Sequence record: MT612988.1
DNA length: 64,000 nucleotides
Direction: 5' to 3' (one strand)
Within the stretch, counting starts at the first letter, position 1. Each line of letters begins with the position of its first letter. This document shows positions 38,311-53,288 of the stretch, in pieces. The notes under the pieces are model-generated. The model saw nothing but the letters and a program-made list of their open reading frames with translations, had not been told where the DNA came from and ran no database searches. The translations under genes were made by a program, and so were the position numbers.

Positions 38311-38577
38311 ATGTCACAACAAACTGCTGAACAAGTAATCGAACAGAAAGACGCACAAATCAAAGATCTGAAAGTGCGTACCTTTGACCTACAAGAGACT
38401 CTTCAAGAAGAACGCAACTCTTTTGGTCAGTTCGTGGGTGTACTAGCTCAACTACTCGATTTCGATCAGGCGCAAGCAAGTTCTCTACAGAACTACGTTG
38501 ACGAAATCGCAATTCTAACCGGTAAAGCTGAACGTCCTGCTGAAGGCGACGGCGAACAAGAAAAAGACGCTGAATAA
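38311..38577 (+). CDS. gp57A: tail fibre assembly chaperone
   Basis: Coiled coil with LKVRTFDLQE; position between gp1 and 57B. Confidence 0.8.
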   Translation: MSQQTAEQVIEQKDAQIKDLKVRTFDLQETLQEERNSFGQFVGVLAQLLDFDQAQASSLQNYVDEIAILTGKAERPAEGDGEQEKDAE

Positions 38578-39032
38578 TGAAACTATCTAAGTTCCTTGAA
38601 AGTCAGGGAACTTACGTTGGTATCAGATTAGACGAGGCGAGTAAGCAAGAGTTAGTTCGATTGCAGAAAACGCTTCGTCTAAAAAATCCGTTAGAACCAG
38701 ATAAATTTCACGTGACTGTGCTTTATAGTCGTAAGCAAATTGATGTACCTGTTGTCGATACCACTTTCGTTGCTACTGTTGAACATATCGACTGTTGGAA
38801 AACGCAAGACGGCAAATATGCAGTTGTTGCTAAGATGGTATGTCCAGAACTTGTAGAACGTCACGATGATCTTATCTCTATCGGTGGTACTCACGACTAC
38901 CCTGACTATACCCCTCACGTTACGTTGTCTTATGACGACGCGATCACACCTATGCCCGTCAACGCTGAAGTTCGGCTTGTTGATGAATATCTTGAACCAC
39001 TTGATTTAAATTGGGTTGATAGTAATGACTGA
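38577..39032 (+). CDS. 57B: 2H phosphoesterase, anti-CBASS nuclease Acb1 homologue
   Basis: Two HxT motifs (HVTVLYS, HVTLSY), WKTQDG, GTHDYPDYTPH, EYLEPL.LNW as in T4 gp57B/Acb1. Confidence 0.9.
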   Translation: MKLSKFLESQGTYVGIRLDEASKQELVRLQKTLRLKNPLEPDKFHVTVLYSRKQIDVPVVDTTFVATVEHIDCWKTQDGKYAVVAKMVCPELVERHDDLISIGGTHDYPDYTPHVTLSYDDAITPMPVNAEVRLVDEYLEPLDLNWVDSND

Positions 39033-39279: not shown

Positions 39280-39295
39280 AAACTTTCAAAAAGTT

Positions 39296-39324
39296 GTTGA
39301 CTTATTCTGAAAAGCATGTAGAAT
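39296..39324 (+). promoter_or_regulatory. T4-type early promoter P1 of the tRNA island
   Basis: A-tract, GTTGAC-17 nt-TAGAAT. Confidence 0.8.
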
Positions 39325-39388
39325 GTATTTCATCGAGTCGAGAGACAGAACACAAACTTTCAACTCGATGAAATATTTGAAAAAAGTT

Positions 39389-39417
39389 GTTGACTTACAC
39401 TGAAATGATGTTAAGAT
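39389..39417 (+). promoter_or_regulatory. T4-type early promoter P2 of the tRNA island
   Basis: A-tract, GTTGAC-17 nt-TAAGAT with TGn extension. Confidence 0.8.
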
Positions 39418-39425
39418 TAACACAG

Positions 39426-39534
39426 TTGATTAAGCGAGCTAAGTTCATCGTTCTCGCCTCTTATTGAAGATGAACAATATTGATTAAGCAGACTAAACTC
39501 ATCGTTTCTGCCTCTTCTCTGAAGATGAGTAATA
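39426..39534 (+). ncRNA. two tandem 54/55-nt repeats, each an H-type pseudoknot
   Basis: S1 GCGAG/CTCGC vs GCAGA/TCTGC; S2 GTTCATC/GATGAAC vs ACTCATC/GATGAGT; five compensated pairs. Confidence 0.8.
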
Positions 39535-39613
39535 TTTTAAATGTGCGTTAGCCGCAATGAATACATGGAGCCAGTATACGTTCTGGCGTGCAAGTAGCGC
39601 ACATTTAAAATAT
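39532..39613 (+). ncRNA. long-stem RNA with a CCGCAA variant of the helix-CWGCAA module
   Basis: 16-bp perfect IR (39532-47/39598-613) extended inward; CCGCAA at 39552. Confidence 0.5.
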
Positions 39614-39628
39614 CGAGAGTACATTGGT

Positions 39629-39751
39629 CGAGTGTTGGTGTAGTGGCAGCACACGTAGCATACTGTAATCAGACATGATTATATTCAGCAACCAATTTAC
39701 GCATATCATAGGGAGATCGTGGGAACGGTTCGATTCCGTTACACTCGACCA
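39629..39751 (+). ncRNA. tRNA-Pro(AGG)-like RNA with a 49-nt insertion between positions 28 and 29
   Basis: Acceptor CGAGTGT/ACACTCG+ACCA, D arm, CG|ATC-ATAGGGA-GATCG anticodon arm, T arm. The insert 39656-39704 holds a hairpin plus CAGCAA. Confidence 0.8.
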
Positions 39752-39784
39752 ATGTACTCTCACTAACAAAGCGAGGTGGACAAT

Positions 39785-39940
39785 TTGATTGTATATCTTC
39801 TCGCACTAGTATTCATCGTCCTCTTTGCCTTGGACATTGAAGAAGAAAAGGTGCGCATTCATACTTTTGCGCTAATCACATGCGAACGGGTCATTCATCC
39901 CGTAATTAAAGCGCACGATTCCAGATTGTGTTTTGATTAG
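39785..39940 (+). CDS. small membrane protein (TTG start)
   Basis: GAGGTGG RBS; N-terminal hydrophobic helix LIVYLLALVFIVLFAL; 51 aa. Confidence 0.5.
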   Translation: MIVYLLALVFIVLFALDIEEEKVRIHTFALITCERVIHPVIKAHDSRLCFD

Positions 39941-40010
39941 CTAAGGCAAATATAACTAGAGGATTTTTGGTGCTTGTGGTTAATCACAAGCACTCTCAAG
40001 AACATATTGA

Positions 40011-40132
40011 GCAGGGTTGGTGTAGTGGCTAGCACACGTAGCATAAACGCAAGCTGTTAAGTTTGTATTCTGCAATCAATTTAGCATATCATTTCCAAGA
40101 TCGTGACGCAGGTTCGAATCCTGCACCCTGCT
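40011..40132 (+). ncRNA. tRNA-Gly(TCC)-like RNA with a 49-nt insertion between positions 28 and 29
   Basis: GCAGGGT/ACCCTGC with U73; 8-nt loop ATTTCCAA; insert 40039-40087 holds a hairpin plus CTGCAA; no encoded CCA. Confidence 0.8.
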
Positions 40133-40150
40133 CAATATGTTTTTACATTG

Positions 40151-40264
40151 GTGAAGTTAGTTCAGTTGGTTAGAATGCCGGCCAAAAAAAACGAAGTCTG
40201 ATAAGATTTCATTCTGCATTCACATGCACGCCGGAGGTCGCAGGTTCGAGTCCTGCACTTCACC
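40151..40264 (+). ncRNA. tRNA-Asp-like body with ~43 nt inserted in the anticodon loop
   Basis: GTGAAGT/ACTTCAC, Asp-type D arm, CCGGC/GCCGG stem, T arm; insert has GAAGTC-TGATAA-GATTTC hairpin plus CTGCAT. Confidence 0.75.
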
Positions 40265-40274
40265 TTCAAATTCT

Positions 40275-40399
40275 GGAGAGTTAGCTCAGTCTGGTAGAGC
40301 AAAAGAATGTTAAAGAATACTGACAAGCATTCATGCTGCAAACCTTAATAACTAGGTAAATCTTTTTGTCACGCGGTTCAAATCCCGTACTCTCCACCA
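40275..40399 (+). ncRNA. tRNA-like RNA with an expanded anticodon loop
   Basis: GGAGAGT/ACTCTCC+ACCA, D arm, AAAGA/TCTTT stem enclosing GAATAC-TGACAA-GCATTC plus CTGCAA. Confidence 0.75.
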
Positions 40400-40413
40400 A
40401 TTTTCGAGGGTTT

Positions 40414-40782
40414 ATGAATAAGTTTAATGACATAAATGACGAACTTGATTGTATATTGCATCGTTGTGAGATTGTAAAGCGCAATCTTCGAAAATATTGT
40501 ACATTTGCTGTTGAAATGCAGTATAGACTTATGATAAACTTCATTGGCATGGGTTGCTATCAACAAGTTCTGCCGATATTAGACAATCTAAATTATCACC
40601 CTGATACAAGTCAGTTTGATAATATTGAGATTATGCAAACTATAAAAGAATTGATGAAATGTGCAGATAAGCTCGATTTGCTGCATCAACAAGACGCATT
40701 TCATCAAATTAAATCGACTGCTCGTATTACAGAAGAAGCAAACATCTTCGCTGCGAAAGTTGGTCGATTTCTAGAGAAATGA
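40414..40782 (+). CDS. hypothetical protein
   Basis: GAGGG RBS before ATG 40414; the track start overlaps a tRNA-like RNA. Confidence 0.7.
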   Translation: MNKFNDINDELDCILHRCEIVKRNLRKYCTFAVEMQYRLMINFIGMGCYQQVLPILDNLNYHPDTSQFDNIEIMQTIKELMKCADKLDLLHQQDAFHQIKSTARITEEANIFAAKVGRFLEK

Positions 40783-40783
40783 T

Positions 40784-40861
40784 GGCCCTATAGCTCAACA
40801 CGGTTAGAGCAACCGACTCATAATCGGTAGGTTACAGGTTCGAGTCCTGTTGGGGTCACCA
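40784..40861 (+). tRNA. tRNA-CAT (Ile2/lysidine type most likely)
   Basis: Cloverleaf, loop CTCATAA, GGCCC acceptor, CCA. Confidence 0.9.
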
Positions 40862-40881
40862 AAATAAATTGAAAAAAGTTG

Positions 40882-40910
40882 TTGACAGACGTTTCATCAA
40901 CGTGTAGTAT
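40882..40910 (+). promoter_or_regulatory. early/sigma70 promoter
   Basis: TTGACA-17 nt-TAGTAT. Confidence 0.8.
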
Positions 40911-40940
40911 ACACATTATCAACTACACGAGGAAAACATT

Positions 40941-41171
40941 ATGTCACATAAATTGCTAGTTATCACATCAATGCACGGTTGCTACGTCGATTACGATTTC
41001 AGAACTGAAATGTTTGACAGATACATGTGTGATGTTGTGATTCCGAACGACTCTGTTGTTTTGTACTCGGGTACAGTTTCAATAGATGAAATTCAAGCAG
41101 TTGCGAACGAATGTTACGCTGACATCAAGATTGAAGAAGTCAGTGATGATGTTTTTGACAGCTATCTTTAA
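40941..41171 (+). CDS. hypothetical acidic protein
   Basis: GAGG RBS, downstream of a promoter. Confidence 0.75.
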   Translation: MSHKLLVITSMHGCYVDYDFRTEMFDRYMCDVVIPNDSVVLYSGTVSIDEIQAVANECYADIKIEEVSDDVFDSYL

Positions 41172-41175
41172 AAAT

Positions 41176-41415
41176 GCCGCTAACTGGCGTACAATACACA
41201 GTGTATTCCCAACATTAGTGCAGACGTAGGCTCGCAACCTACGTTGGTACCGAATCACTGGGACCGAGTAGAAAGTGCATGTGAGATGTCGAAGTCTTGT
41301 ATGTAGAAATAACGCTCGGCTGCTCTGAAATGCTGATTAGCTCTTACTTCGAAACTCTAATTGGGTGGAAGAGGTGTTGTGTTTGACGTGTGTTCGATTC
41401 ACACGAGCGGCGCCA
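41176..41415 (+). ncRNA. 240-nt RNA with tmRNA-like tRNA termini
   Basis: GCCGCT/AGCGGC acceptor + GCCA, T arm GTGTG-TTCGATT-CACAC preceded by GAC, stemless D loop, helix ACAATAC/GTGTTGT. Confidence 0.7.
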
Positions 41416-41428
41416 AGAGGAAATTATA

Positions 41429-41950
41429 ATGAAACCATTGAAGTTCGTTGAAGCGTTCTCTAAAGAAGAACGTGCTGCTATGACGATTGAAGAACGTAGC
41501 AGACTTCGTAAAATATATAACGAACGCTATCAAGAGTATGTTGATAAGTACATCAATGTATTCACTCGAAAAGACTTTCGAAGAGAGCGTTGCTGGGTTA
41601 TTCTTGCACGATGTAAAAAGACTGGTGAAATCATCGGTCGAATTGAAAATAGTTTTAGTATGGGATGGTCTAAAGAGCGTGTTCGTGTTATTCGACCGTA
41701 TCTAAACGGTAATTTCACGGGCGATGACCGCTTCTCTAAAGCTGAGTACAACAAAGCGTGTGCTGAGTACATAACTCATCATGAGAAACAAGTAAAGTCT
41801 CTCAGAGAAGCTTACAAAGACACTCACGACGTTTTCTTATCTCGTGTGGGTAGTAAGAACTGTCCTGTTTCTATTGATTGGGATACGTATTACAGTAAAA
41901 AAGACAAACGAAACTTTGAATATCGAAATTTGAAATTCAAAGTTAAATAA
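41429..41950 (+). CDS. hypothetical basic protein
   Basis: GAGG RBS before ATG 41429. Confidence 0.75.
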   Translation: MKPLKFVEAFSKEERAAMTIEERSRLRKIYNERYQEYVDKYINVFTRKDFRRERCWVILARCKKTGEIIGRIENSFSMGWSKERVRVIRPYLNGNFTGDDRFSKAEYNKACAEYITHHEKQVKSLREAYKDTHDVFLSRVGSKNCPVSIDWDTYYSKKDKRNFEYRNLKFKVK

Positions 41951-41955
41951 TTCAT

Positions 41956-42071
41956 AGTCGGGTAGCTCAGTGGTAGAGCACGAAGAATGATACTGACAAG
42001 TATCGCTCCAGCACTCCTTCAATTGCCTGTTAAGCACGTGGTCGCTGGTTCGAATCCAGCCCCGACTACCA
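41956..42071 (+). ncRNA. tRNA-Asn(GTT)-like RNA with a 41-nt insertion between positions 28 and 29
   Basis: AGTCGGG/CCCGACT+ACCA; CG|TGC-CTGTTAA-GCACG; insert 41983-42023 has GATAC-TGACAA-GTATC plus CAGCAC. Confidence 0.82.
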
Positions 42072-42097
42072 TTTTTGATAAACTAGTGAGGTATAAC

Positions 42098-42334
42098 ATG
42101 AGCGGAACATTTAATATCAACAAAACGTTACTGACTCCGAAACAATTGCGCAATCTAACAGATGAGCGTCTGAATGAATATCGCAAGTCGTTTCGTAAGC
42201 CTCTTGGGTTTTTGAAGCATCTGAACGATACAAACGAATTGACTTCAGATCAGCACAAGAAATTCGTTGAGCTTAATAAGCACTACAACGACGAAATTCT
42301 TGCTGAAATGAACAAGCGAAAACACTTAGGTTAA
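42098..42334 (+). CDS. hypothetical protein
   Basis: GAGGT RBS before ATG 42098. Confidence 0.7.
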   Translation: MSGTFNINKTLLTPKQLRNLTDERLNEYRKSFRKPLGFLKHLNDTNELTSDQHKKFVELNKHYNDEILAEMNKRKHLG

Positions 42335-42604
42335 TAAAATCGCAGAAAATTGAAAAAAATTATCAATTTTCTGCGAAAATACCGCAAATCGTCAGATTTA
42401 GTGTTATAAGTACTATAAAGAAACAAAACAAATTTTAATTTTTATTTCAAGAGAGCATTCAATGACGCATTCGTTTACACATTCATCTGAGACATTACGC
42501 AGCGATTTTTTGCGCTCAGAATTCGTGTATCTAGCGAATCCGATTGCGAACCAGAAGTGGGATACCCTCTTGTAGTCCGATAGTATAACATAGAAGTATA
42601 CTTG

Positions 42605-42628
42605 AGGACGCAAATAGCGTCCTTTTTT
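42605..42628 (+). terminator. intrinsic terminator
   Basis: AGGACGC/GCGTCCT followed by a T tract. Confidence 0.8.
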
Positions 42629-42705
42629 ATGGGCGTAAGAAAGTTAAGAAATTTTGTTTAACGTACTTTGATTACAGAGTATGATAAACAAAGTTAAAGA
42701 ACAAA

Positions 42706-42779
42706 CGGGACGTGGCGTAAAGGTAGCGTTCATGCTTTGGGAGCATGTGGTAAGAGTTCGAGTCTCTTCGTCCCGACCA
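42706..42779 (+). tRNA. tRNA-Pro(TGG)
   Basis: Cloverleaf, loop TTTGGGA, CCA. Confidence 0.93.
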
Positions 42780-42788
42780 ATTTAAAAT

Positions 42789-42865
42789 CCGTGACTAGCT
42801 CAATCTGGTAGAGTACTCCGTTTGGGGCGGAGAAGTTAAGCGTTCGAATCGCTTGTCACGGACCA
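42789..42865 (+). tRNA. tRNA-Pro(TGG), second copy
   Basis: Cloverleaf, loop TTTGGGG, CCA. Confidence 0.93.
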
Positions 42866-42872
42866 GTTTAAT

Positions 42873-42948
42873 GCCCGATTAGCTCAATTGGAAGAGCAGC
42901 GCCCTACGAAGGCGAAGGTTACAAGTTCGAATCTTGTATTGGGTGCCA
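42873..42948 (+). tRNA. tRNA-Arg(ACG)
   Basis: Cloverleaf, loop CTACGAA, CCA. Confidence 0.93.
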
Positions 42949-43150
42949 GTTAGTGTTGTTTGATTGAAGCTCGCTTTCGCACATTCCCGAAACTGCTTCT
43001 ACGAATTGATACGCTTAGGACCGTATCTCGTTAAGTACTGTCGAGATGATAGAATTTAACGAACTTTTCATAAATTAGTGTTTATGATGTCTTGAGCGAG
43101 TGTTAATATTAACACATAGAAAATGAAAACGTTAAGTTCTTCAAAATAAA

Positions 43151-43283
43151 TTCAAAAAGATGTTTACAACGATATAAACATCGTGTACAATGAAGAAAAG
43201 CGAAACATCATTCAAAATCGAATGAAAAGTTTTTCAAAAAAGATGTTTACAACGATAAAAACATCATGTACAATGAAGAAAAG
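43151..43283 (+). promoter_or_regulatory. duplicated early promoters (two ~50-bp direct repeats)
   Basis: TTTACA-17 nt-TACAAT at 43163-43191 and 43246-43274. Confidence 0.85.
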
Positions 43284-43301
43284 AAGTTTACAAAATTTAA
43301 T

Positions 43302-43378
43302 GCGCAAGTAGCCCAATTGGCAGAGGCACTGGTCTTAGAAACCAGAAGTTAAGAGTTCGAATCTCTTCTTGCGTACCA
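43302..43378 (+). tRNA. tRNA-Leu(TAG), short variable loop
   Basis: Cloverleaf, loop CTTAGAA. Confidence 0.9.
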
Positions 43379-43379
43379 A

Positions 43380-43454
43380 GCACCCTTAGCTTATCAGGAA
43401 AAGCGGCGGATTGAAGTCCCGCAGTGCTCGGTTCGATTCCGAGGGGGTGCACCA
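43380..43454 (+). tRNA. tRNA-Phe(GAA)
   Basis: Cloverleaf, loop TTGAAGT. Confidence 0.88.
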
Positions 43455-43543
43455 TATTATAGCTTGTTTGTAAGAGTTAAATCAAGCAAGGGGTTTTAGT
43501 TTTGGGTTATTTAGCAAACGCTCTTAACGTGAAAATCAAATCT

Positions 43544-43618
43544 GGGTCGTTCGTATAACGGTAGTACATCTGGCTTTTAACCAGAACGGTGAGAGTTCGA
43601 ATCTCTTGCGACCCACCA
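43544..43618 (+). tRNA. tRNA-Lys(TTT)
   Basis: Cloverleaf, loop CTTTTAA. Confidence 0.92.
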
Positions 43619-43629
43619 GATTTTATAAT

Positions 43630-43706
43630 GCGTCGGTAGCTCATCATGGAAGAGCAGGGAGCTTTTAACTCTCAGGTGTCTGGTTCGAGTCCAGGGCGGC
43701 GTACCA
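43630..43706 (+). tRNA. tRNA-Lys(TTT), second copy
   Basis: Cloverleaf, loop CTTTTAA. Confidence 0.9.
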
Positions 43707-43769
43707 AATTAGATACATTGTGTATCGCTTTGCAAGTTAGATAGCTTGCAAATCAATATACAATTTAAT

Positions 43770-43844
43770 TCTCCCGTGGACTAACGGTAGGTCATCACCC
43801 TTTCAAGGTGAAGTGCGCGAGTTCGAATCTCGTCGGGAGAACCA
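43770..43844 (+). tRNA. tRNA-Glu(TTC)
   Basis: Cloverleaf, loop CTTTCAA. Confidence 0.92.
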
Positions 43845-43850
43845 AATTAC

Positions 43851-43936
43851 GGAGCGTACGTCTCAAGGTGAGACAGGGGACTGTAAATCCCTGACCCTTA
43901 ACGGGTAGAGAGGTTCGATTCCTCTACGCTCCACCA
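43851..43936 (+). tRNA. tRNA-Tyr(GTA)
   Basis: Loop CTGTAAA, long variable arm. Confidence 0.92.
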
Positions 43937-43941
43937 GTTTT

Positions 43942-44028
43942 AGCTTGCATACTGCAATTTAACTTAATCTATTGATCGCTCGGCGAACTCAGTTCAGACA
44001 GCGATAAACAGACCAAAGAACGCAAGCT
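43942..44028 (+). ncRNA. free-standing helix-CTGCAA RNA
   Basis: AGCTTGC/GCAAGCT closing helix, ATA-CTGCAA, inner ATCGCT/AGCGAT hairpin. Confidence 0.65.
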
Positions 44029-44038
44029 GTTGAATAAT

Positions 44039-44115
44039 TGCGGGGTAGAGAAGTGGTCATCTCGTCGGTCTCATAAGCCGGAGAACGCTGGTTCGAATCC
44101 AGCCCCACGCAACCA
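44039..44115 (+). tRNA. tRNA-fMet(CAT)-like, bulged acceptor stem
   Basis: TGCGGGG/CCC(A)CGCA-ACCA, loop CTCATAA. Confidence 0.8.
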
Positions 44116-44161
44116 AATTTATTTCGACTAAATATTGTTTTACGCAATAAGGAAAATTACA

Positions 44162-44404
44162 ATGAAAACATTTGATGAATTCATTACCGAGTCGAAAGAT
44201 GTTACTTTCGGAGTTTCTGGCTCACTTTTTAGTGGTGCAATGGATAGAGAGAGACATCGAAACATGATGCAAAAACTTGGCGCTGTTAGAGACACCAAAT
44301 CAAAATCACAAGATAATGTTTGGGTTGTCAGTCAAGCGAATGCTGATGCAGTTGAAGAATATCTTAGTCAGTTTGATAAGCTGATGTGGGGTAGACACAA
44401 ATAA
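44162..44404 (+). CDS. candidate internal head protein (capsid-targeting sequence)
   Basis: MKTFDEFITE|S; late-promoter-like ACTAAATA at 44127. Confidence 0.75.
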   Translation: MKTFDEFITESKDVTFGVSGSLFSGAMDRERHRNMMQKLGAVRDTKSKSQDNVWVVSQANADAVEEYLSQFDKLMWGRHK

Positions 44405-44410
44405 TTAATT

Positions 44411-44509
44411 GGAAGGCTTAGCCGAGAGATTCTGGGTAGCGGCAACGGTCTTGAAAACCGTCGGTCACCGGGAGGTGATGTTAGGGTTCGAATCCCTAGT
44501 CTTCCGCCA
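44411..44509 (+). tRNA. tRNA-Ser(TGA), enlarged D loop
   Basis: Loop CTTGAAA, long variable arm. Confidence 0.88.
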
Positions 44510-44573
44510 ATTAGTTAACCGGTAAGTTTAGTCACTTAACCGATTAACACGAGCACTGAAATGTGCTCACTTT

Positions 44574-44647
44574 AGTCCCTTAGCTCAACGGTAGAGCGTG
44601 CGACCGATAATCGCTTGGTAAGAGTTCGATTCTCTTAGGGACTACCA
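44574..44647 (+). tRNA. tRNA-Ile(GAT)
   Basis: Loop CCGATAA. Confidence 0.9.
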
Positions 44648-44653
44648 AATTTT

Positions 44654-44727
44654 AGGGGCATGATGTAAAGGCAGCATGACGGATTCCAAACCCGTTCGTT
44701 AGAGTTCGAATCTCTATGCCCCTGCCA
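44654..44727 (+). tRNA. tRNA-Trp(CCA)
   Basis: Loop TTCCAAA, G73. Confidence 0.9.
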
Positions 44728-44732
44728 GTTTA

Positions 44733-44790
44733 AGTAATCTTACAGCAAACAATACAAAACTTTTATTTGGAAAAAGCAAAAAGGATTACT
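44733..44790 (+). ncRNA. free-standing helix-CAGCAA RNA
   Basis: AGTAATCT/GGATTACT helix, TA-CAGCAA, inner CTTTT-ATTTGGA-AAAAG anticodon-like hairpin. Confidence 0.65.
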
Positions 44791-44802
44791 GTTTAAATTC
44801 AA

Positions 44803-44877
44803 GGGTGTGTAACTCAGAGGCAGAGTAGCAAGCTGTTAACTTGCAAGTCGAGATTTCGAAATTCTCCACGCCCGCCA
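44803..44877 (+). tRNA. tRNA-Asn(GTT), atypical T stem
   Basis: Loop CTGTTAA. Confidence 0.85.
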
Positions 44878-44878
44878 C

Positions 44879-44954
44879 GCTTCATTAACTCAGTTGGTAG
44901 AGTGTCTGACTGTTAATCAGAGAGTCGTTGGTTCGAGTCCAACATGAAGCGCCA
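44879..44954 (+). tRNA. tRNA-Asn(GTT), second copy
   Basis: Loop CTGTTAA. Confidence 0.93.
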
Positions 44955-45023
44955 AATTCGGAGAGTCACTACCGTTAAGTGTGAACTTGAAAAAACAAAG
45001 CAACTAATTTAAGTTGTCTTTGG

Positions 45024-45099
45024 GGAGCCGAGGTGTAAAAGGTTGCATGTCTCCCTGTCACGGAGAAGGTAGCGGGTTCGAAACCCGTCGGTTCCGCCA
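45024..45099 (+). tRNA. tRNA-Asp(GTC)
   Basis: Loop CTGTCAC. Confidence 0.92.
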
Positions 45100-45118
45100 A
45101 AGATAATTTAAGAACAAT

Positions 45119-45192
45119 TGGGGATTGGTGTAAAGGCAGCATAACGTACTTTGAATGCGTTGGTATCAGTTCGAATCTGTTATCCCCAGCCA
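45119..45192 (+). tRNA. tRNA-Gln(TTG)
   Basis: Loop CTTTGAA, U1-A72. Confidence 0.92.
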
Positions 45193-45201
45193 AATACCAT
45201 A

Positions 45202-45315
45202 GAGTGTTTTCAGCAAACAATTTACTAATATTCTTCTGATGAAAAGAAAAGTTCGAGGTTCGATTCCTCTTCAGTGTCGGTATCACTGGTCTGGACGACG
45301 CTAGTAATAACACTC
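45202..45315 (+). ncRNA. circularly permuted tRNA mimic (YrlA-like topology) with CAGCAA
   Basis: GAGTGTT/AACACTC closing helix; order is CAGCAA, anticodon-like hairpin, T arm, loop-capped stem CAGTG/CACTG, D-like GTC-TGGAC-GAC. Confidence 0.75.
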
Positions 45316-45321
45316 AGTTAC

Positions 45322-45396
45322 GCTCCTGAAGCATTGATGGCGATGCAGCGGTCTTGTAAACCGCAGAATTCGGTTCGATTCCGAACGGGAGCACCA
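45322..45396 (+). tRNA. tRNA-Thr(TGT)
   Basis: Loop CTTGTAA. Confidence 0.92.
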
Positions 45397-45421
45397 TATT
45401 GATTAGAAAGTGTTATCATGA

Positions 45422-45429
45422 TATAAATA
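45422..45429 (+). promoter_or_regulatory. late promoter TATAAATA
   Basis: Exact consensus, 31 nt upstream of the 45460 ORF. Confidence 0.8.
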
Positions 45430-45459
45430 GTCATGTAACTACATTTTAGAGGTAATAAC

Positions 45460-45735
45460 ATGTCTATTAAAACATTTTCTGAATATCTTAACGAAGCAAA
45501 GCATCGTGGGTCTGGCGTAGACACTCATGACGGTAAGATTCCGTATGTATACGCTGACAGTAAAGACGCTGCTGCATTTGCTGATTTCGTATCGTCAATA
45601 GGTATGAAGCTTGATTCGAACGGTGAATTGAAGCTTTCTACACGAGATAAAGTACGAAAGTTCTTCTCAGAGCTTGATCAAGAAGCAACTAATTTCATGC
45701 TTCATGGCAACTTTGATATTATTGAATATATGTAA
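45460..45735 (+). CDS. candidate internal head protein (capsid-targeting sequence)
   Basis: MSIKTFSEYLNE|A; late promoter and GAGG RBS. Confidence 0.78.
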   Translation: MSIKTFSEYLNEAKHRGSGVDTHDGKIPYVYADSKDAAAFADFVSSIGMKLDSNGELKLSTRDKVRKFFSELDQEATNFMLHGNFDIIEYM

Positions 45736-45750
45736 AAATTGGTGATTGTA

Positions 45751-45960
45751 ATGGTATATATTTCTGTATGGTGTGAATATGACATTGGTGGGGATTTCGG
45801 TGGCAACAATAACGAAGATGTTTTTTCCGTTAGTGAAGAATTATCTAATGAAGAAGTTGAAGCAAAAGTTGCTGAATATATTTCTGACATTGTTGGTGAG
45901 CCGATTGAAGAACTTGAAGGTTTATACGGTTGGGAATATATTTCAATCACACAGTTGTAA
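45751..45960 (+). CDS. hypothetical acidic protein
   Basis: GGTG RBS before ATG 45751. Confidence 0.65.
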   Translation: MVYISVWCEYDIGGDFGGNNNEDVFSVSEELSNEEVEAKVAEYISDIVGEPIEELEGLYGWEYISITQL

Positions 45961-45967
45961 AAAATAT

Positions 45968-46042
45968 GGGCCGTTAGCTTAATTGGGAAAGCGCCTCACT
46001 TGCAATGAGGAAGATAGGGTTCGACTCCCTGCGTGTCCACCA
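45968..46042 (+). tRNA. tRNA-Ala(TGC), irregular acceptor stem
   Basis: Loop CTTGCAA, G3-U70. Confidence 0.82.
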
Positions 46043-46116
46043 AATTTCGAACACATGAGCGTAGACTCTCTTTACTACCATCGTCTACACTAGTTCATGG
46101 TTCGAATCTTTTCAAT

Positions 46117-46192
46117 GCGCTGTTAGCTCAATTGGAAGAGCACGTCCCTTCTAAGGATGGGGTTATGAGTTCGAATCTCATACGGCGTGCCA
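46117..46192 (+). tRNA. tRNA-Arg(TCT)
   Basis: Loop CTTCTAA. Confidence 0.93.
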
Positions 46193-46204
46193 TATTAAGC
46201 TCTT

Positions 46205-46715
46205 ATCATGCGACGAATGATACTTTGCTTCGGCATATCACGAGCATGGTGAGAGAGACAATATACAGCAAACAATTGAAATTACTTAAAAGAAGTGATG
46301 ATCTTAACCTGGGCTGATTTTAACCTGAGCTTGCTTAGGCGCAGCTTGAAAGGAAAGATTCTCTCTGTCTAGAAATAGTCAGATAGGCGCGTCGCTGAAA
46401 CAGACGATATTTGCTTGTTGAGAATCAATAAGCTAGTCAACTCCGATTTATGCAAAAGACGAAAAAACACTTCGGTATTGTCTGTACTTAATTCGTCGGA
46501 AACGACACTGTAGCCGAAAGGCAAGATACGCTAACTTAGATGTTAGCAGCGATATAGGATGTATCGCGTGGCATTATTATGAACGTTTCTAGTCATCGTC
46601 ATGTAAAACAATCAAAACTAAGCAGAGGTAACAGTACCCACTATGTGGTTCCTCACTCAGACCATGAATATATGGTGTCAGCCAGTGTGCGATTAAATGA
46701 GTTAATTACTGCAAT
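46205..46715 (+). ncRNA. ~500-nt highly structured non-coding region containing a helix-CAGCAA module (46252-46366)
   Basis: Many stable hairpins (C-UUCG-G and GAAA tetraloops); no RBS-led ORF. Confidence 0.6.
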
Positions 46716-46716
46716 T

Positions 46717-46792
46717 GGTGATGTAGCTCAAGTGGCAGAGCAACGCTTTCATACGGCGTAAGATCCGATTTCGAGTATCGGTGTCACCTCCA
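46717..46792 (+). tRNA. tRNA-Met(CAT), atypical (U73, T stem lacks G53-C61)
   Basis: Cloverleaf, loop TTCATAC. Confidence 0.75.
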
Positions 46793-46812
46793 AATTCAAA
46801 AACAAAGAGGTT

Positions 46813-46977
46813 ACGAAGCATGACTACTTTACACTAAGCAAGGGCAACATACGCGATAAAATTCGATATGTTGAAAAATGTCTCGCGAATGAGACCAACC
46901 CGTTCTTTATAAGAACACTTACTGTAGAGCTTACGAATCTACGTGCAATACGTGATTTGTTCGACGCTTCAGATTAA
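46813..46977 (+). pseudogene. 54-codon open frame beginning ACG after a GAGG RBS
   Basis: KHDYFTLSKGNIRDKIRYVEKCL...; no ATG in frame. Confidence 0.4.
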
Positions 46978-46981
46978 CAAT

Positions 46982-47055
46982 GCGGGTATGATGTAATGGT
47001 AGCATGACGTCCTTCCAAGTCGTTCGTCTCGGTTCGAGTCCGTGTACCCGCTCCA
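46982..47055 (+). tRNA. tRNA-Gly(TCC)
   Basis: Loop CTTCCAA, U73. Confidence 0.9.
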
Positions 47056-47061
47056 AATTTT

Positions 47062-47135
47062 GGTCCCTTAGTATAATGGCAGTACGTCTCTTTTACACAG
47101 AGAAAGAAGTGGCTCGATTCCACTAGGGACTACCA
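47062..47135 (+). tRNA. tRNA-Val(TAC)
   Basis: Loop TTTACAC. Confidence 0.88.
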
Positions 47136-47158
47136 TTCTTTATGATGAGAAATAAATT

Positions 47159-47398: not shown

Positions 47399-47550
47399 CG
47401 GAGTAGTGCTCCGACCGAATGACACACGCAAATGAGTCCGGTTGACAAACGTTATATGTCCCAAAGTATTGCAGGTAGCGACGGCGGTGTTGCTAGTAGA
47501 TTTATCTATTTCTCCAAGACATAATGCAAGCTTTTAAAGTGTACTTTGGT

Positions 47551-47627
47551 GTGGCAGTGGGTGAAGTGGAAATACCCCCGGGTTGTGATTCCGGAAGATG
47601 CGGGTTCGATCCCCGTCTGTCACCCCA
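47551..47627 (+). tRNA. tRNA-His(GTG)
   Basis: Loop TTGTGAT, C73. Confidence 0.9.
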
Positions 47628-51241: not shown

Positions 51242-51282
51242 GACATTTTACAGCAATTAATTATGAGGAAATGAACAATGTC
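51242..51282 (+). promoter_or_regulatory. leader helix-CAGCAA module enclosing the RBS and start codon
   Basis: GACATT (51242-47) pairs with AATGTC (51277-82), which includes ATG 51278; TTA-CAGCAA at 51248-56; RBS GAGG in the loop. Confidence 0.75.
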
Positions 51283-52714
51283 AGTATTTATGAACGCAAT
51301 GCAAACAAACGATTCACGCACAGCAAACGGTGCAGTTACTCACAGCACTTCAGGTAACGAGTGTCTAAACTTGTTCTTCGGTATTGCTGCTATGCGTGGC
51401 AACGATCAGTCTAAAACACTGTTCGGTCGTGCGTTTGCAGAAAACCCAGAACTAGCGACTCGCATTCTTTTGTGGTCTCGTGATGTTCGAGGTGGTGCGG
51501 GTGAACGTGGTACTTTCCGTACTCTATTCACTAAACTTTGTAATGAACAGCCTGACGTAGCTCGTGCTGTAATGTCGAAAATTCCAGAACTAGGTCGTTA
51601 CGATGACTTGATTTCTGCTTTCGGTACACGTCTTGAAAAAGATGCGATTACAATGTGGTCGAACGCAATTGTCAATGACAAGAATGGTCTTGCTGCGAAG
51701 TGGTTCCCACGTGAAAACAGCAAAAACGGTCATGTGTTCAAGCGCACAATCAAGTCTCTTGGCGTAACTGCGAAGCAGTGGCGTAAGATTCTGTCGCTTC
51801 TGTCTGACACTGTTGAGCAGAAGATGTGTGCGCAAAAATGGGATGCAATCGACTTCGGTAAGTTGCCTTCTGTAGCGTCTGCTCGTTATCAACAAGCATT
51901 CGGTCGTAACGCTTCAACACGTTACACAAACTACATCGAGTCACTTCAAAAAGGTGAAGCGAAGATCAACGCTGGCGCATTGTTCCCATACGATGTCGTT
52001 AAGAGCGTTAGTCACGGTAATGCGTCTGTAGCGAACGAGCAATGGAAAGCTCTGCCAAACTACATGGAAGGTTCTGATGAACGCATCATCCCTGTTGTTG
52101 ACGTGTCTGGCTCTATGAGCACGCCAATTAACGCAGGTACAGACCGTTCAGGTGTGACTTGTAAGCAAGTTGCAATGTCTCTTGGGATTTATGTTGCTGA
52201 ACGCAATGAAGGCATCTTCAAAGATCAGTTCATTTCGTTCTCAAGCGACCCGCACTTCCACCAGTTGCGCGGCTCTTCATTGAAAGAGCGTCTTGATAAC
52301 ATGAATCGTTCAGGCGAAGACATGAGCACGAACATCGGTAAGTGCTTTGATGTTCTGTTAGAACGTGCGAAGCGTGCAAATCTTTCACAAGAAGATATGC
52401 CAACCAAGTTGCTTATCATGAGTGACATGGAATTCGATCAAGCAAACACTGGTGGTGGTTGGTACGGTCGCGGTGAACCTGCGAACTTCGATGCAATCAA
52501 AGCCAAGTACGCACGTGCTGGTTATGAAATGCCACAACTGGTCTTCTGGAACATTCGTGGTCGTCTTGGCAACGTTCCGGTTAAAGCTGGTGAAGCGGGT
52601 ACTGCACTGGTATCTGGTTGTAGCCCATCTATCTTGACTTCACTGTTGGGTGGTGAGCTTGAGCCAATCAAGATCATGATGAAAACTGTAGGCGTCGAAC
52701 GCTACAGCTTTTAA
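51278..52714 (+). CDS. TROVE-like + vWA domain protein (Ro60/Rsr-related, DUF2828-like)
   Basis: N-terminal T.NGA..H.TSGN.CL.LFF, RDVRGGAGER, GRYDDL, AAKWFPRE helical region; vWA MIDAS DVSGSMS; SDMEFD; LVFWN. Confidence 0.88.
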   Translation: MSVFMNAMQTNDSRTANGAVTHSTSGNECLNLFFGIAAMRGNDQSKTLFGRAFAENPELATRILLWSRDVRGGAGERGTFRTLFTKLCNEQPDVARAVMSKIPELGRYDDLISAFGTRLEKDAITMWSNAIVNDKNGLAAKWFPRENSKNGHVFKRTIKSLGVTAKQWRKILSLLSDTVEQKMCAQKWDAIDFGKLPSVASARYQQAFGRNASTRYTNYIESLQKGEAKINAGALFPYDVVKSVSHGNASVANEQWKALPNYMEGSDERIIPVVDVSGSMSTPINAGTDRSGVTCKQVAMSLGIYVAERNEGIFKDQFISFSSDPHFHQLRGSSLKERLDNMNRSGEDMSTNIGKCFDVLLERAKRANLSQEDMPTKLLIMSDMEFDQANTGGGWYGRGEPANFDAIKAKYARAGYEMPQLVFWNIRGRLGNVPVKAGEAGTALVSGCSPSILTSLLGGELEPIKIMMKTVGVERYSF

Positions 52715-52757: not shown

Positions 52758-53288
52758 GTGAAAATGTTCGATTGGGAAGCGATAGAAACAGCTATCAATA
52801 ACAGTCATCCAAATAGCACAATATACGTTGGGTGTGATAGTAAGCGTAAAAGTGACATGATTAGTTACGCGACTGTGATCATAATTCATCTTGAAGGTAG
52901 TAAAGGTGCTCAAGTGTTTAAAGCAGTTGAGACTGAACCTGCATACTTATCATGTAAAGATGGTATCAGAAGTCGATTGATGAATGAAGTATACAAAGCG
53001 GGTGAAACTGCACTAATGGTTAAGCCAATGTGCGGTACTAGAGGCTTTGAAGTTCACGTTGACATCAACCCTGACCCTACACACAAATCTCACGTTGCCT
53101 ATAACGAAGCTAAAGGCACGATCATGGGATATGTTGGTCAAGAGCCCGTGTTCAAACCTGATGCGTTTGCTGCGTCTTGTGCTGCTGATTATGACGCAGT
53201 TCGAAGAGCAGATAAAATCGCTAAACGAAAAGAACTTAGACGGGCTAAACGAAAAGCAAAGAAACAAAAAACAAAAGGGCGCAAATAG
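52758..53288 (+). CDS. RNase H-fold protein (DUF458-like) with basic C-tail
   Basis: IYVGCDS, RLMNEV, EVHVDIN, ASCAAD acidic residues; GTG start with GAGG RBS. Confidence 0.75.
   Translation: MKMFDWEAIETAINNSHPNSTIYVGCDSKRKSDMISYATVIIIHLEGSKGAQVFKAVETEPAYLSCKDGIRSRLMNEVYKAGETALMVKPMCGTRGFEVHVDINPDPTHKSHVAYNEAKGTIMGYVGQEPVFKPDAFAASCAADYDAVRRADKIAKRKELRRAKRKAKKQKTKGRK

What the first reader, a model, noticed from the sequence alone, without database searches (positions are those of the whole stretch)
40151..40399. Two adjacent tRNA bodies whose anticodon loop is replaced by the module
Seen: 40151-40264 (Asp-like D arm and CCGGC/GCCGG stem) and 40275-40399 (AAAGA/TCTTT stem, CCA end) keep acceptor, D and T arms. 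Their loops hold a hairpin with a TGA(T/C)AA loop followed by CTGCA. The same TGACAA loop occurs in the Asn-like RNA at 41994. Such RNAs cannot decode, but they retain the elbow, as YrlA does.
Basis: partly seen in the sequence, partly recalled or inferred. Interest (0 to 1): 0.72.

Follow-up and report, generated by a model that had tools for sequence, protein, structure and literature searches.

The report
Module-bearing tRNA mimics of phages
The two adjacent genes are conserved, folded tRNA-shaped RNAs of a Vibrio phage whose anticodon loop is replaced by a fixed hairpin-plus-CNGCA module, and they belong to an undescribed RNA class found only in phages, inside tRNA gene clusters and sometimes beside a phage Ro60-like protein gene, so they are probably working tRNA mimics rather than dead tRNA genes.

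Summary
Window 40151-40264 (C) and 40275-40399 (D) are complete tRNA bodies: Rfam tRNA 53.6 and 50.1 bits, with 46- and 49-nt inserts in the anticodon loop. Each insert holds a hairpin capped by U[GNNA]A, with C-N-G-C-A exactly 10 nt downstream. Three more copies lie at 39626, 40009 and 41956. The window is Vibrio phage R10Z (KVP40-like), and KVP40 annotates these loci as pseudo-tRNAs. They are not pseudogenes. Every helix shows compensatory changes (0/500 shuffles reach the observed covariation), and the RNAs are more conserved than flanking genes. The design occurs in at least 21 unrelated viral lineages, always inside tRNA clusters. It was not found in 596 Gb of cellular genomes (0/36 pattern hits pass the structural filter, against 49/90 viral hits). 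C is a bacterial-type tRNA-Asp body lacking U33-G34-U35, so it cannot decode or be cleanly spliced. Sister members keep canonical anticodon loops, mostly Tyr/Asn/Asp/His/Glu, which duplicate ordinary phage tRNAs and switch quickly. In Cronobacter phage S13 and three uncultured lineages, module RNAs lie within 0.15-2.5 kb of that gene. These RNAs fail YrlA membership. Best reading: a new class of phage tRNA mimics, possibly Ro60 partners. Function is unproven.

The parts
40151..40264 (+). RNA C: tRNA-Asp-type body with the module in place of U33-G34-U35. No encoded CCA; KVP40 'tRNA-Pseudo-5'.
   Evidence: Rfam tRNA 53.6 bits with a 46-nt insert. Aligned with E. coli aspU. Covariation: 98.1% of cells paired, 9 pairs with double changes, 0/500 shuffles. 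89.5-95.6% identity against 65-90% for adjacent CDS and IGR.
40193..40210 (+). C module, hairpin P1: 7 bp including the U-A closing pair, GAUA tetraloop at 40200-40203.
   Evidence: P1 covaries in all families.
40214..40218 (+). C module, conserved C-U-G-C-A motif. The GCA starts 10 nt after the loop-closing G. It also forms the 5' strand of the local hairpin P2 at 40215-40228.
   Evidence: P2 is not kept in the D479 and L072 orthologues.
40275..40399 (+). RNA D: tRNA body with an intact AAAGA/UCUUU stem, AUGUUAA (Asn-like) directly after the 5' strand, then the module. CCA is encoded; KVP40 'tRNA-Pseudo-4'.
   Evidence: Rfam tRNA 50.1 bits with a 49-nt insert. 93.9% of cells paired, 0/500 shuffles. 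94.4% identity in KVP40/V09/V07 and 85-87% in K566/F86, where neighbouring CDS are 45-70%. Orthologues in L072 and phage S13.
40315..40332 (+). D module, hairpin P1 (GAAUACU / AGCAUUC), GACA tetraloop at 40322-40325.
   Evidence: Compensatory stem swap in 1.081.O and K566.
40336..40340 (+). D module, conserved C-U-G-C-A motif. It is followed by P2 (40342-40357) and the conserved UAACUARGUAAA.
41956..42071 (+). RNA E: module inserted between nt 28 and 29 of the anticodon stem. An intact 3-bp inner stem and the canonical Asn loop CUGUUAA follow. CCA is encoded; KVP40 'tRNA-Pseudo-3'.
   Evidence: Rfam 49.8 bits. 99.5% of cells paired, 12 pairs with double changes. U29-A41 changes to A29-U41 in D479. 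97-100% identical across KVP40-like phages.
39626..39751 (+). RNA A: same design (insert at 28/29), loop AUAGGGA, sitting on a conserved long stem (~39613-39764).
   Evidence: (122 bits to R1).
40009..40135 (+). RNA B: paralogue of A, 8-nt loop AUUUCCAA, sitting on a conserved long stem followed by a U run.
   Evidence: (135 bits).
51278..52714 (+). Ro60-like protein gene (TROVE-like helical ring plus vWA/MIDAS; Pfam DUF2828+DUF7788). Candidate protein partner.
   Evidence: Pfam. PHROG 850 'RNA-binding protein'. AF2 pLDDT 80.7. Foldseek top 13 hits all Ro60/Rsr, E 4e-9 to 2e-6.
52758..53288 (+). PF04308 RNaseH-like protein gene adjacent to the Ro60-like gene. It recurs near module RNAs in another lineage (possible accessory; weak).

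Best explanation
C and D are functional, non-decoding tRNA mimics. They belong to a phage-specific RNA class in which a 40-55-nt module is grafted onto the anticodon arm of an otherwise complete tRNA.

The module has four parts, in order:
- an A-rich linker;
- a 6-8-bp hairpin capped by a U-A-closed GNNA tetraloop;
- C-N-G-C-A at a fixed 10-nt offset;
- a G-poor linker or second hairpin.

The RNAs are transcribed with the tRNA cluster from early-type promoters. They offer normal tRNA ends and an elbow to tRNA-processing enzymes. The invariant geometry of the module, which does not depend on which tRNA body carries it, is best explained as a docking site for a protein.

The best candidate is the phage's own Ro60-like (TROVE+vWA) protein. 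That would make these RNAs Y-RNA analogues in which the Ro-binding element sits where YrlA has its Ro-binding stem (the anticodon-arm end of the L), but on an unpermuted tRNA.

The bodies and anticodon loops carried by the class suggest the RNP acts in the phage-host conflict over tRNAs. C is Asp-type, D and E are Asn-type, and other members are mostly Tyr/Asp/Asn/His/Glu/Lys. From general knowledge, these are classic anticodon-nuclease targets. The RNP might act as bait, decoy or repair platform.

Shown here: structure, selection, distribution, the protein's fold, and gene adjacency in some lineages.
Inferred: expression and processing, protein binding, and the biological role.
For: - Structure: tRNA model hits. 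Covariation beats all shuffles and all slid registers in four family alignments and in a 141-sequence cross-lineage alignment.
- Selection: the RNAs are more conserved than their flanks. C-type and D-type orthologues exist in unrelated lineages.
- Class: 49/90 IMG/VR pattern hits pass the structural filter. They fall in 21 lineages, and the CM adds more.
- Phage-only: 0/36 pattern hits in cellular genomes pass the filter.
- Module regularity: the loop is UGACAA or UGAUAA in 43/55, CNGCA is present in 53/55, and the offset is 10 in 52/55.
- C cannot regenerate an anticodon.
- Anticodon spectrum and duplication: GUA x11, GUU, GUC, GUG, UUC and others; 12 duplicates against 4 new in well-sampled clusters. 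Near-identical bodies carry UUC, GUC, UCU or GUU.
- The protein is Ro60-like.
- Adjacency: the order is RNA-RNA-gene in lineage 1, and gene-RNA-RNA in L045/L124 and Cronobacter phage S13. L164 and L092 have the RNA within 0.7-2.5 kb. DUF2828 is the only family recurring in 5 or more of the 21 lineages.
- In mycobacteriophage Lumos, a YrlA-like RNA occupies the equivalent position beside the same protein family.
- No conventional Y RNA is detectable near the window's Ro60-like gene.
Against: - In the window the Ro60-like gene is 9-11 kb from the RNAs.
- Only 2 of 80 Ro60-anchored IMG/VR loci carry the module within 10 kb.
- 710 cultured phages have the protein, but module RNAs were found among cultured phages only in KVP40-like vibriophages and S13.
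- tRNAs are no closer to the gene than random placement within the same loci. Co-location could reflect a shared 'RNA island' in large lytic phages.
- The YrlA Ro-site motif is absent.
- No expression, binding or phenotype data were available.
- The intact canonical anticodon loops and CCA ends of E-type members are not needed by a pure protein-tether model.
Confidence: 0.45

Rival explanations
1. They are anticodon-nuclease decoys or nuclease-shielded spare tRNAs that act without Ro60. The tRNA body, and where present the authentic anticodon loop, baits a host tRNA-cleaving defence enzyme. The module then blocks cleavage, blocks product release, or keeps the RNA off the ribosome. This is compatible with, and may be one half of, the best explanation.
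For: - The loops reproduce whole canonical isoacceptor loops, judged from my memory of E. coli tRNAs: CUGUAAA, CUGUUAA, CUGUCAC, CUUUCAC, CUUUUAA.
- The anticodons are dominated by N-U-N.
- They mostly duplicate an ordinary tRNA of the same cluster.
- The anticodon switches among UUC, GUC, UCU and GUU on near-identical chassis.
- C is a host-type tRNA-Asp lacking exactly U33-G34-U35.
- The class is restricted to phages.
Against: - No nuclease has been identified, and there are no experimental data.
- A stoichiometric decoy is a weak answer to a catalytic nuclease.
- This reading does not explain why the hairpin loop, the CNGCA motif and their spacing are so invariant.
- Some loops are 8-9 nt or non-canonical (AUAGGGA).
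Confidence: 0.25
2. They are intron-containing tRNA genes. The module would be a short intervening sequence recognised and excised by a phage or host nuclease. The nick left in the anticodon stem would then be sealed, for example by a phage nick-sealing RNA ligase, to give functional tRNAs.
For: - In E, A, B and most relatives, removing the insert between nt 28 and 29 restores a perfect 5-bp anticodon stem and a 7-nt loop with U33, A37 and A38. The split stem covaries.
- Most members encode CCA.
- They lie inside tRNA clusters.
- An RNaseH-like gene lies beside the Ro60-like gene.
Against: - C has no anticodon to restore.
- Distant D-type members lack AUGUUAA.
- 9 of 48 parsed loops are 8-9 nt.
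- The anticodons mostly duplicate ordinary tRNAs of the same cluster.
- Ser anticodons occur without the long variable arm.
- No insert-less alleles exist in 2.6 Mb.
- There is no group I intron signal in the region and, by inspection, no bulge-helix-bulge.
- No bacterial or phage machinery for such excision is known to me.
Confidence: 0.15
3. They are decaying tRNA pseudogenes, as annotated in KVP40: relics with junk insertions and no function.
For: KVP40 and several other records label them pseudo or tRNA-OTHER. ARAGORN does not call them.
Against: - Compensatory changes occur in every helix, including the insert hairpin.
- Conservation is higher than in neighbouring genes.
- The same module recurs at the same site in 21 or more unrelated phage lineages.
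Confidence: 0.02

Closest known systems
YrlA-type bacterial and phage Y RNAs (Rfam RF02553; Chen et al. 2014, PMC4201824)
   Same: - Non-coding RNAs that mimic the tRNA D arm, T arm and acceptor.
- Associated with a Ro60 orthologue.
- The non-tRNA element sits at the anticodon-arm end of the L.
- Some YrlA RNAs are cleaved by RNase P and receive CCA.
- In mycobacteriophage Lumos a YrlA-like RNA lies beside the same protein family.
   Different: - YrlA is a permuted tRNA: closed acceptor arm, with the 5' and 3' ends forming the Ro-binding stem that carries GNCGAA(N)G.
- The RNAs here keep normal tRNA topology with an open acceptor and often CCA.
- They lack that motif (1/65).
- They carry a different conserved module.
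- They often keep a full anticodon stem-loop.
- They do not reach the Rfam threshold.
Phage T4 stable RNAs rnaC and rnaD (species 1 and 2)
   Same: Small RNAs of unknown function encoded in the syntenic tRNA region of a related phage (gene order gp3, gp1, 57A, 57B, then tRNAs). They are of similar size, 119-139 nt.
   Different: The T4 RNAs do not match the tRNA model and show no P1/CNGCA module on reading. No homology was detected.
Intron-containing tRNAs (bacterial group I introns in anticodon loops; archaeal introns at non-canonical positions)
   Same: An intervening sequence interrupts the anticodon arm. In the E type, the flanking halves would form a canonical tRNA.
   Different: - The insert is 40-55 nt with no group I signature.
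- No bulge-helix-bulge is visible.
- The position is 28/29 in the stem, or it replaces the anticodon itself.
- C-type members cannot yield a tRNA.
tmRNA and engineered 'tRNA scaffold' RNAs
   Same: A tRNA-like frame (acceptor and T arm) carries a foreign functional RNA domain in place of the anticodon arm.
   Different: ARAGORN finds no tmRNA and no mRNA-like tag. Unlike tmRNA, the D arm is complete. The scaffold analogy is conceptual only.
Phage-encoded tRNAs proposed to counter host anticodon nucleases
   Same: Extra phage copies of tRNAs with nuclease-targeted anticodons, in the tRNA clusters of lytic phages.
   Different: Those are ordinary 72-90-nt tRNAs. Here a conserved 40-55-nt domain is built into the anticodon arm. 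This comparison rests on my general knowledge of that literature, not on a test here.

Membership tests
tRNA (Rfam RF00005) | Score at or above the curated gathering threshold (29 bits), with full-length alignment | tested here: met
   C 53.6, D 50.1, E 49.8 bits, model positions 1-71/71. A and B are not hit.
tRNA (Rfam RF00005) | 7-bp acceptor, 4-bp D stem with GG loop, 5-bp T stem with TTCRANY loop | tested here: met
   Alignments and covariation. D has a one-base bulge in its T stem in the window.
tRNA (Rfam RF00005) | 5-bp anticodon stem closing a 7-nt loop with U33 and an anticodon | tested here: not met
   C and D: the stem encloses 47-54 nt, and C lacks U33-G34-U35. E, A and B: the loop is present but the stem is interrupted after nt 28 by about 41-55 nt.
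tRNA (Rfam RF00005) | Aminoacylation and decoding | not testable with these tools
   Needs acid-gel Northern blots or tRNA-seq.
YrlA / Y RNA (Rfam RF02553) | Score at or above the gathering threshold (69 bits) | tested here: not met
   The only hit is 32 bits, over model positions 27-81, at 40236-40300. It bridges the T arm of C and the D arm of D, so it is a dimeric-tRNA artefact.
YrlA / Y RNA (Rfam RF02553) | 5' and 3' ends pair into a long stem bearing the Ro60 site with GNCGAA(N)G | tested here: not met
   The motif is present in 1/65 module RNAs. The ends form a normal acceptor stem.
YrlA / Y RNA (Rfam RF02553) | Permuted tRNA-like domain in the order T arm, closed acceptor arm, D arm | tested here: not met
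   The order here is acceptor, D, module, T, acceptor. Compare Lumos YrlA.
YrlA / Y RNA (Rfam RF02553) | Encoded next to a Ro60 orthologue | tested here: inconclusive
   In the window the distance is 9-11 kb. The RNAs are directly adjacent in S13, L045/L124, L164 and lineage 1, but only 2/80 Ro60-anchored loci carry the module.
YrlA / Y RNA (Rfam RF02553) | Bound by Ro60 in vivo | not testable with these tools
   Needs immunoprecipitation or EMSA.
Ro60 / TROVE protein (for window 51278-52714) | Ring of helical repeats plus a C-terminal vWA domain with MIDAS | tested here: met
   AF2 pLDDT 80.7, pTM 0.79. Foldseek top 13 hits are all Ro60/Rsr/TROVE, with TM up to 0.63 over the full length. An invariant D-x-S-x-S motif is present. 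Sequence-level evidence is only marginal: E=0.009 over the MIDAS stretch.
Group I intron in tRNA | Match to the Rfam Intron_gpI model / catalytic core | tested here: not met
   No hit in 39900-42150 at E<=1. The model does detect a real one in L114.
Spliced tRNA (any mechanism) | Excision of the insert restores a canonical tRNA | tested here: inconclusive
   E, A and B: yes by sequence. D in the window: possible, but not in distant D-type members. C: no. ARAGORN's intron mode gives arbitrary answers.
T4 rnaC/rnaD | Sequence or structure homology | tested here: not met
   The T4 RNAs do not match the tRNA model, and no module is seen. Only the synteny of the region is shared.

The most novel reading that the evidence does not exclude
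These RNAs would define a new kind of viral ribonucleoprotein. Complete tRNAs are fused through a dedicated docking module to a phage Ro60 orthologue. These tRNAs have a CCA end and authentic anticodon loops that switch rapidly among nuclease-targeted identities. The phage would thereby display real tRNA anticodon arms as bait to intercept, neutralise or repair damage from host anticodon nucleases. Anticodon-less members such as C and D would act as uncleavable inhibitors. This would give the large, uncharacterised DUF2828 Ro60 family of phages a function and a ligand. The family is present in 710 cultured phages, including FelixO1, P100-like and mycobacteriophages.
Probability: 0.2. Interest if true: 0.9.

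Novelty: new variant of a known kind. Interest (0 to 1): 0.78.

Why it matters
Loci written off since 2003 as tRNA pseudogenes, or given arbitrary 'intron-containing tRNA-X' labels, turn out to be members of a conserved, phage-only RNA class with a precisely built inserted domain. That matters in three ways.

1. Annotation. tRNA counts and codon-usage arguments for KVP40-like and many uncultured phages include or exclude these genes at random.
2. RNA biology. The class is a natural 'tRNA scaffold' carrying a defined module. It is a second, independently built solution to what YrlA does, namely putting a tRNA-shaped handle on another functional element.
3. Phage-host conflict. Three things make a concrete hypothesis testable in ordinary Vibrio and Cronobacter phage systems: the anticodon spectrum, the rapid anticodon switching, and the link to a Ro60 orthologue found in hundreds of cultured phages. 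The hypothesis is that phage Ro60 RNPs act on tRNA-targeting defences.

Tried and rejected
- ARAGORN, default and intron mode, plus exhaustive in-silico deletion: too permissive and inconsistent to define an anticodon.
- T4 rnaC/rnaD as homologues: no tRNA-model hit and no module.
- IMG/VR search from the neighbouring 122-aa ORF: only VH7D and KVP40 were found.
- Loop-loop pairing between the P1 tetraloop and the anticodon-like loop, and pairing of CNGCA with a fixed partner: no covariation on inspection. RNAalifold's GC/GC pairing in A/B is not kept in other families.
- RNAalifold's alternative local stem (CAU/GUG) versus the tRNA-like 27-28/42-43 pairs: the D479 and D482 variants favour the latter.
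- Hammerhead or other small ribozymes, riboswitches and CRISPR-repeat mimics: no Rfam hit at E<=1, and no resemblance on reading.
- Bodies as recent copies of the phage's own tRNAs: best identity is 72-78%, which is background.
- Insert-less alleles: none.
- Cultured relatives of the Tyr-type and L049-type RNAs: none in GenBank phages.
- Taxonomy of the uncultured lineages from PHROGs: uninformative.
- Conserved neighbours of the Ro60-like gene (ClpP, DnaJ, RNase HII, NUDIX): lineage synteny, not an RNA-repair cassette.
- Other recurrent neighbours of the RNAs: HNH and other homing endonucleases.
- BLAST of C against E. coli genomes: no hit, because the arms are too short for that database. 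Replaced by direct alignment.
- The KVP40 genome paper could not be read.
- One MAFFT run timed out and was replaced by a BLAST-based comparison.
Full report
WHAT THE WINDOW IS. Window 39900-42100 is 100% identical to Vibrio phage vB_ValM_R10Z (MT612988.1). It is 85-89% identical to KVP40 and its relatives, which are T4-related Schizotequatrovirus phages of about 245 kb. The gene order upstream (gp3, gp1, 57A, 57B, then the tRNA region) matches T4's tRNA locus. ARAGORN finds 28 ordinary tRNAs at 40784-48242.

THE OBSERVATION. The Rfam tRNA model aligns end to end with three interrupted RNAs:
- 40151-40264 (C): 53.6 bits, 46-nt insert.
- 40275-40396 (D): 50.1 bits, 49-nt insert.
- 41956-42068 (E): 49.8 bits, 54-nt insert.
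ARAGORN calls none of them. Two further copies, A (39626-39751) and B (40009-40135), are paralogues of each other that the tRNA model misses. KVP40 annotates C, D and E as tRNA-Pseudo-5, -4 and -3. phi-Grn1 calls B, C, D and E tRNA-Cys, -Phe, -Asn and -Val, and calls A a pseudo-tRNA. ARAGORN's intron mode says SeC, Asp, Val and Gly. These labels are arbitrary. The 'Asp-like' remark is correct: outside the insert, C matches E. coli aspU almost base for base and does not resemble the phage's own tRNA-Asp.

ANATOMY. All five RNAs share one plan. It runs: tRNA body, base stem, A-rich linker, hairpin P1, 2-4 nt, C-N-G-C-A, a linker and/or a second hairpin, then the 3' strand of the base stem.
- P1's stem sequence is replaced completely between relatives yet stays paired.
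- P1's 'UGNNAA loop' is a GNNA tetraloop closed by a U-A pair that swaps to A-U in family A. The two middle bases are free to vary.
- Across 55 parsed members, the loop is UGACAA or UGAUAA in 43, CNGCA is present in 53, and the GC(A/G) starts exactly 10 nt after the loop-closing G in 52.

Two subtypes exist.
- In C and D the 5-bp anticodon stem is intact and the module lies inside the loop.
- In A, B, E and most relatives the module is inserted between nt 28 and 29 of the 5' strand of the anticodon stem. An intact 3-bp inner stem and a 7-nt (sometimes 8-9-nt) loop follow.
The split stem is supported by coordinated double changes. Examples are U29-A41 to A29-U41 in E, and all three inner pairs plus G28-C42 to C28-G42 in the D479 copies of B.

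REAL, SELECTED RNAS. Covariation results per family:
- A+B: 97.0% of cells paired, 21/32 pairs with double changes.
- D: 93.9% paired.
- C: 98.1% paired, 9 pairs with double changes.
- E: 99.5% paired, 12 pairs with double changes.
In every case 0/500 shuffles reach the observed covariation score, and slid registers fall to 26-50% paired. A 141-sequence cross-lineage alignment gives 92.8% paired against 57% for shuffles; that alignment was fitted to the model. C is 89.5-95.6% identical in relatives, and D is 94.4%. D remains 85-87% identical in K566 and F86, where adjacent genes are 45-70% identical. A and E are 97-100% identical. C and D are each absent from some relatives: nt-1 and QD01 have C only, while CZ01, PVA8, phi-ST2 and K566 have D only. 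Recognisable C-type and D-type orthologues nevertheless exist in an unrelated uncultured lineage (L072) and in Cronobacter phage S13. The pseudogene reading is untenable.

A WIDESPREAD, PHAGE-ONLY CLASS. I scanned IMG/VR with a pattern encoding the module geometry plus a T loop. It returned 79 loci.
- 49 of 90 matches pass an independent filter: P1 stem, T stem and acceptor pairing.
- A covariance model built from A+B then showed that almost all of the loci contain long members, sometimes several in tandem; L072 has five.
- They fall in at least 21 lineages.
- They are always embedded in dense clusters of ordinary tRNAs, with up to 44 in an 11-kb locus.
- The same pattern in 596 Gb of bacterial and archaeal genomes gave 36 hits, and none pass the filter.
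- No insert-less alleles exist in 2.6 Mb of fetched DNA.
- None of the window's five bodies is a recent copy of one of the phage's own tRNAs.
- I found no description of these RNAs in the searchable literature, beyond 'pseudo-forms' in genome papers.

WHAT THE LOOPS SAY. The 28/29-type members carry loops with U33, A37 and A38 that reproduce whole canonical isoacceptor loops. I judged this from my memory of E. coli tRNAs. The loops seen are CUGUAAA (11 times), CUGUUAA, CUGUCAC, CUUUCAC, CUUUUAA and others. About half of the 7-nt loops are G-U-N, and about two thirds have U35. Nine of 48 parsed loops are 8-9 nt.
- In loci with at least 15 ordinary tRNAs, the anticodon usually duplicates one already present: 12 duplicates against 4 new.
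- Near-identical bodies from related contigs carry UUC, GUC, UCU or GUU.
- Ser anticodons occur without a long variable arm.
These RNAs therefore do not fill decoding gaps. Their anticodon identity evolves fast, and it is biased toward the tRNAs that anticodon nucleases classically target (established knowledge, not tested here). C is a host-type tRNA-Asp with U33-G34-U35 replaced by the module. It therefore cannot decode, and no clean excision can convert it into a tRNA. By parsimony, the module is a retained functional domain and not an intron.

THE TROVE PROTEIN. Window 51278-52714 encodes a DUF2828+DUF7788 protein, assigned to PHROG 850, 'RNA-binding protein'.
- Sequence searches link it to TROVE proteins only marginally.
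- A 37-sequence alignment gave a confident AlphaFold model: pLDDT 80.7, pTM 0.79.
- The model's 13 best PDB matches are all Ro60/Rsr/TROVE, with E from 4e-9 to 2e-6 and TM up to 0.63 over the full length. They include D. radiodurans Rsr and the Ro60 of Thermus phage phiLo. The next matches are isolated vWA domains.
- The protein is therefore a Ro60 orthologue.
- The family occurs in 710 cultured phages, including mycobacteriophage 'Ro-like RNA binding proteins'.

IS IT THE PARTNER? Evidence for:
- It is the only protein family recurring near module RNAs in 5 or more of the 21 lineages. KVP40-like phages add a further lineage.
- In lineage 1 the order is RNA, RNA, gene on one strand, with gaps of 0.15-0.7 kb.
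- In L045/L124 and in Cronobacter phage S13, two module RNAs follow the gene by 0.5 kb. In L164 one module RNA precedes the gene by 0.7 kb.
- This mirrors phiLo, where Yrl1 and Yrl2 lie just upstream of Ro60. It also mirrors mycobacteriophage Lumos, where a YrlA-like RNA (39 bits, full-length, E 3e-5) lies 130 nt downstream of the same protein family.
- The window has no conventional Y RNA near its gene.

Evidence against:
- Only 2 of 80 protein-anchored loci carry the module within 10 kb.
- In FelixO1 the gene simply heads an ordinary tRNA cluster.
- tRNAs are no nearer to the gene than random placement within the same loci.
- In the window the distance is 9-11 kb.
The link is suggestive but not established.

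NOT YrlA. According to Chen et al. 2014, YrlA has a stem formed by its 5' and 3' ends that carries GNCGAA(N)G, and a permuted tRNA-like domain with a closed acceptor arm. Here the topology is that of a normal tRNA, and the motif occurs in 1/65 members. The only Rfam YrlA hit (32 bits against a gathering score of 69) bridges the T arm of C and the D arm of D. That paper warns about exactly this dimeric-tRNA false positive. The functional analogy survives: a tRNA-shaped handle with the non-tRNA element at the anticodon-arm end. Membership does not.

MECHANISM, AND HOW SURE.
- Shown: fold, selection, distribution, the module's regularity, the protein's fold, and adjacency in some lineages.
- Inferred, step 1: co-transcription with the tRNA cluster. 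Early-type promoters lie at 39297 and 39390, and C and D have none of their own. Processing would be by tRNA enzymes.
- Inferred, step 2: the module is a protein-docking site, most likely for the Ro60-like protein.
- Inferred, step 3: the RNP acts on tRNA-directed host defences.
I put about 0.95 on 'functional structured RNA' and about 0.7 on 'C and D do not decode'. I put about 0.4 on 'Ro60 partner', about 0.15 on 'spliced intron' and 0.02 on 'pseudogene'.

VERDICT. The finding opens onto an undescribed, phage-restricted class of module-bearing tRNA mimics. I rate it a new variant of a known kind (tRNA-like non-coding RNAs / Y-RNA-like partners), with interest 0.78.

Noticed in passing
window 39613-39764 and 39995-40147: RNAs A and B sit on top of conserved long helices, about 18 bp beyond the acceptor core. 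The helices show compensatory changes in every relative. B's helix is followed by a U run. C, D and E lack this. It looks like an RNase III-type processing stem or a terminator-like clamp.
   Followed up: partly
window 41175-41418: An unannotated 244-nt RNA-like element with a tRNA-like acceptor stem, a T arm (GUGUG UUCGAUU CACAC) and a GCCA end, lying between two small ORFs. It is 92% conserved in KVP40, V09 and V07, and it has no Rfam match. It is reminiscent of T4's large stable RNAs.
   Followed up: partly
window 39280-39620: This stretch holds two strong early-type promoters (39297, 39390). It also holds two ~55-nt direct repeats beginning GATTAAGC (about 39427-39540) and a long hairpin (about 39541-39615), just upstream of RNA A. 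These may be further small RNAs or regulatory elements.
   Followed up: no
window 45968-46039: A tRNA with loop CUUGCAA (Ala UGC) is found by Rfam at 44.9 bits but missed by ARAGORN. With it, the phage's ordinary tRNAs cover all 20 amino acids.
   Followed up: no
window 38577-39032: gp57B is an Acb1-family anti-CBASS phosphodiesterase (Pfam PF23474, E 8e-46). Several GenBank records annotate it as 'RNA ligase'.
   Followed up: no
window 51278-53288; L045:7462-7935: The Ro60-like gene is followed on the same strand by a PF04308 'RNaseH-like' gene (PHROG 11311). The same family recurs a few kb from module RNAs in the S13-like contig.
   Followed up: partly
L218 (Salmonella phage FelixO1) 9001-17063; L217 (Mycobacterium phage Lumos) 4570-4678: The DUF2828-type Ro60 family is present in 710 cultured phages. 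In FelixO1 it sits 166 nt upstream of the first gene of the 22-tRNA cluster. In Lumos a sub-threshold YrlA-like RNA lies 130 nt downstream of it.
   Followed up: partly
L219 (Cronobacter phage S13) 11893-12018 and 12023-12140: A cultured phage outside Vibrio carries two module RNAs directly downstream of its Ro60-like gene. They are annotated tRNA-Ser (121 nt) and tRNA-OTHER (113 nt). This gives a convenient experimental system.
   Followed up: yes
L072:268-941 (uncultured, IMGVR_UViG_3300033696_000004): Five module RNAs lie in tandem, including C-type and D-type orthologues. ARAGORN calls no ordinary tRNA in the 12-kb locus.
   Followed up: partly
L114:19404-19595 and neighbouring loci L117, L121: Other unusual tRNA-like genes occur near Ro60-like genes in uncultured phages. 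These include a group I intron (Rfam 58.6 bits) in a tRNA cluster and 110-150-nt Leu/Ser-like RNAs with different inserts.
   Followed up: no
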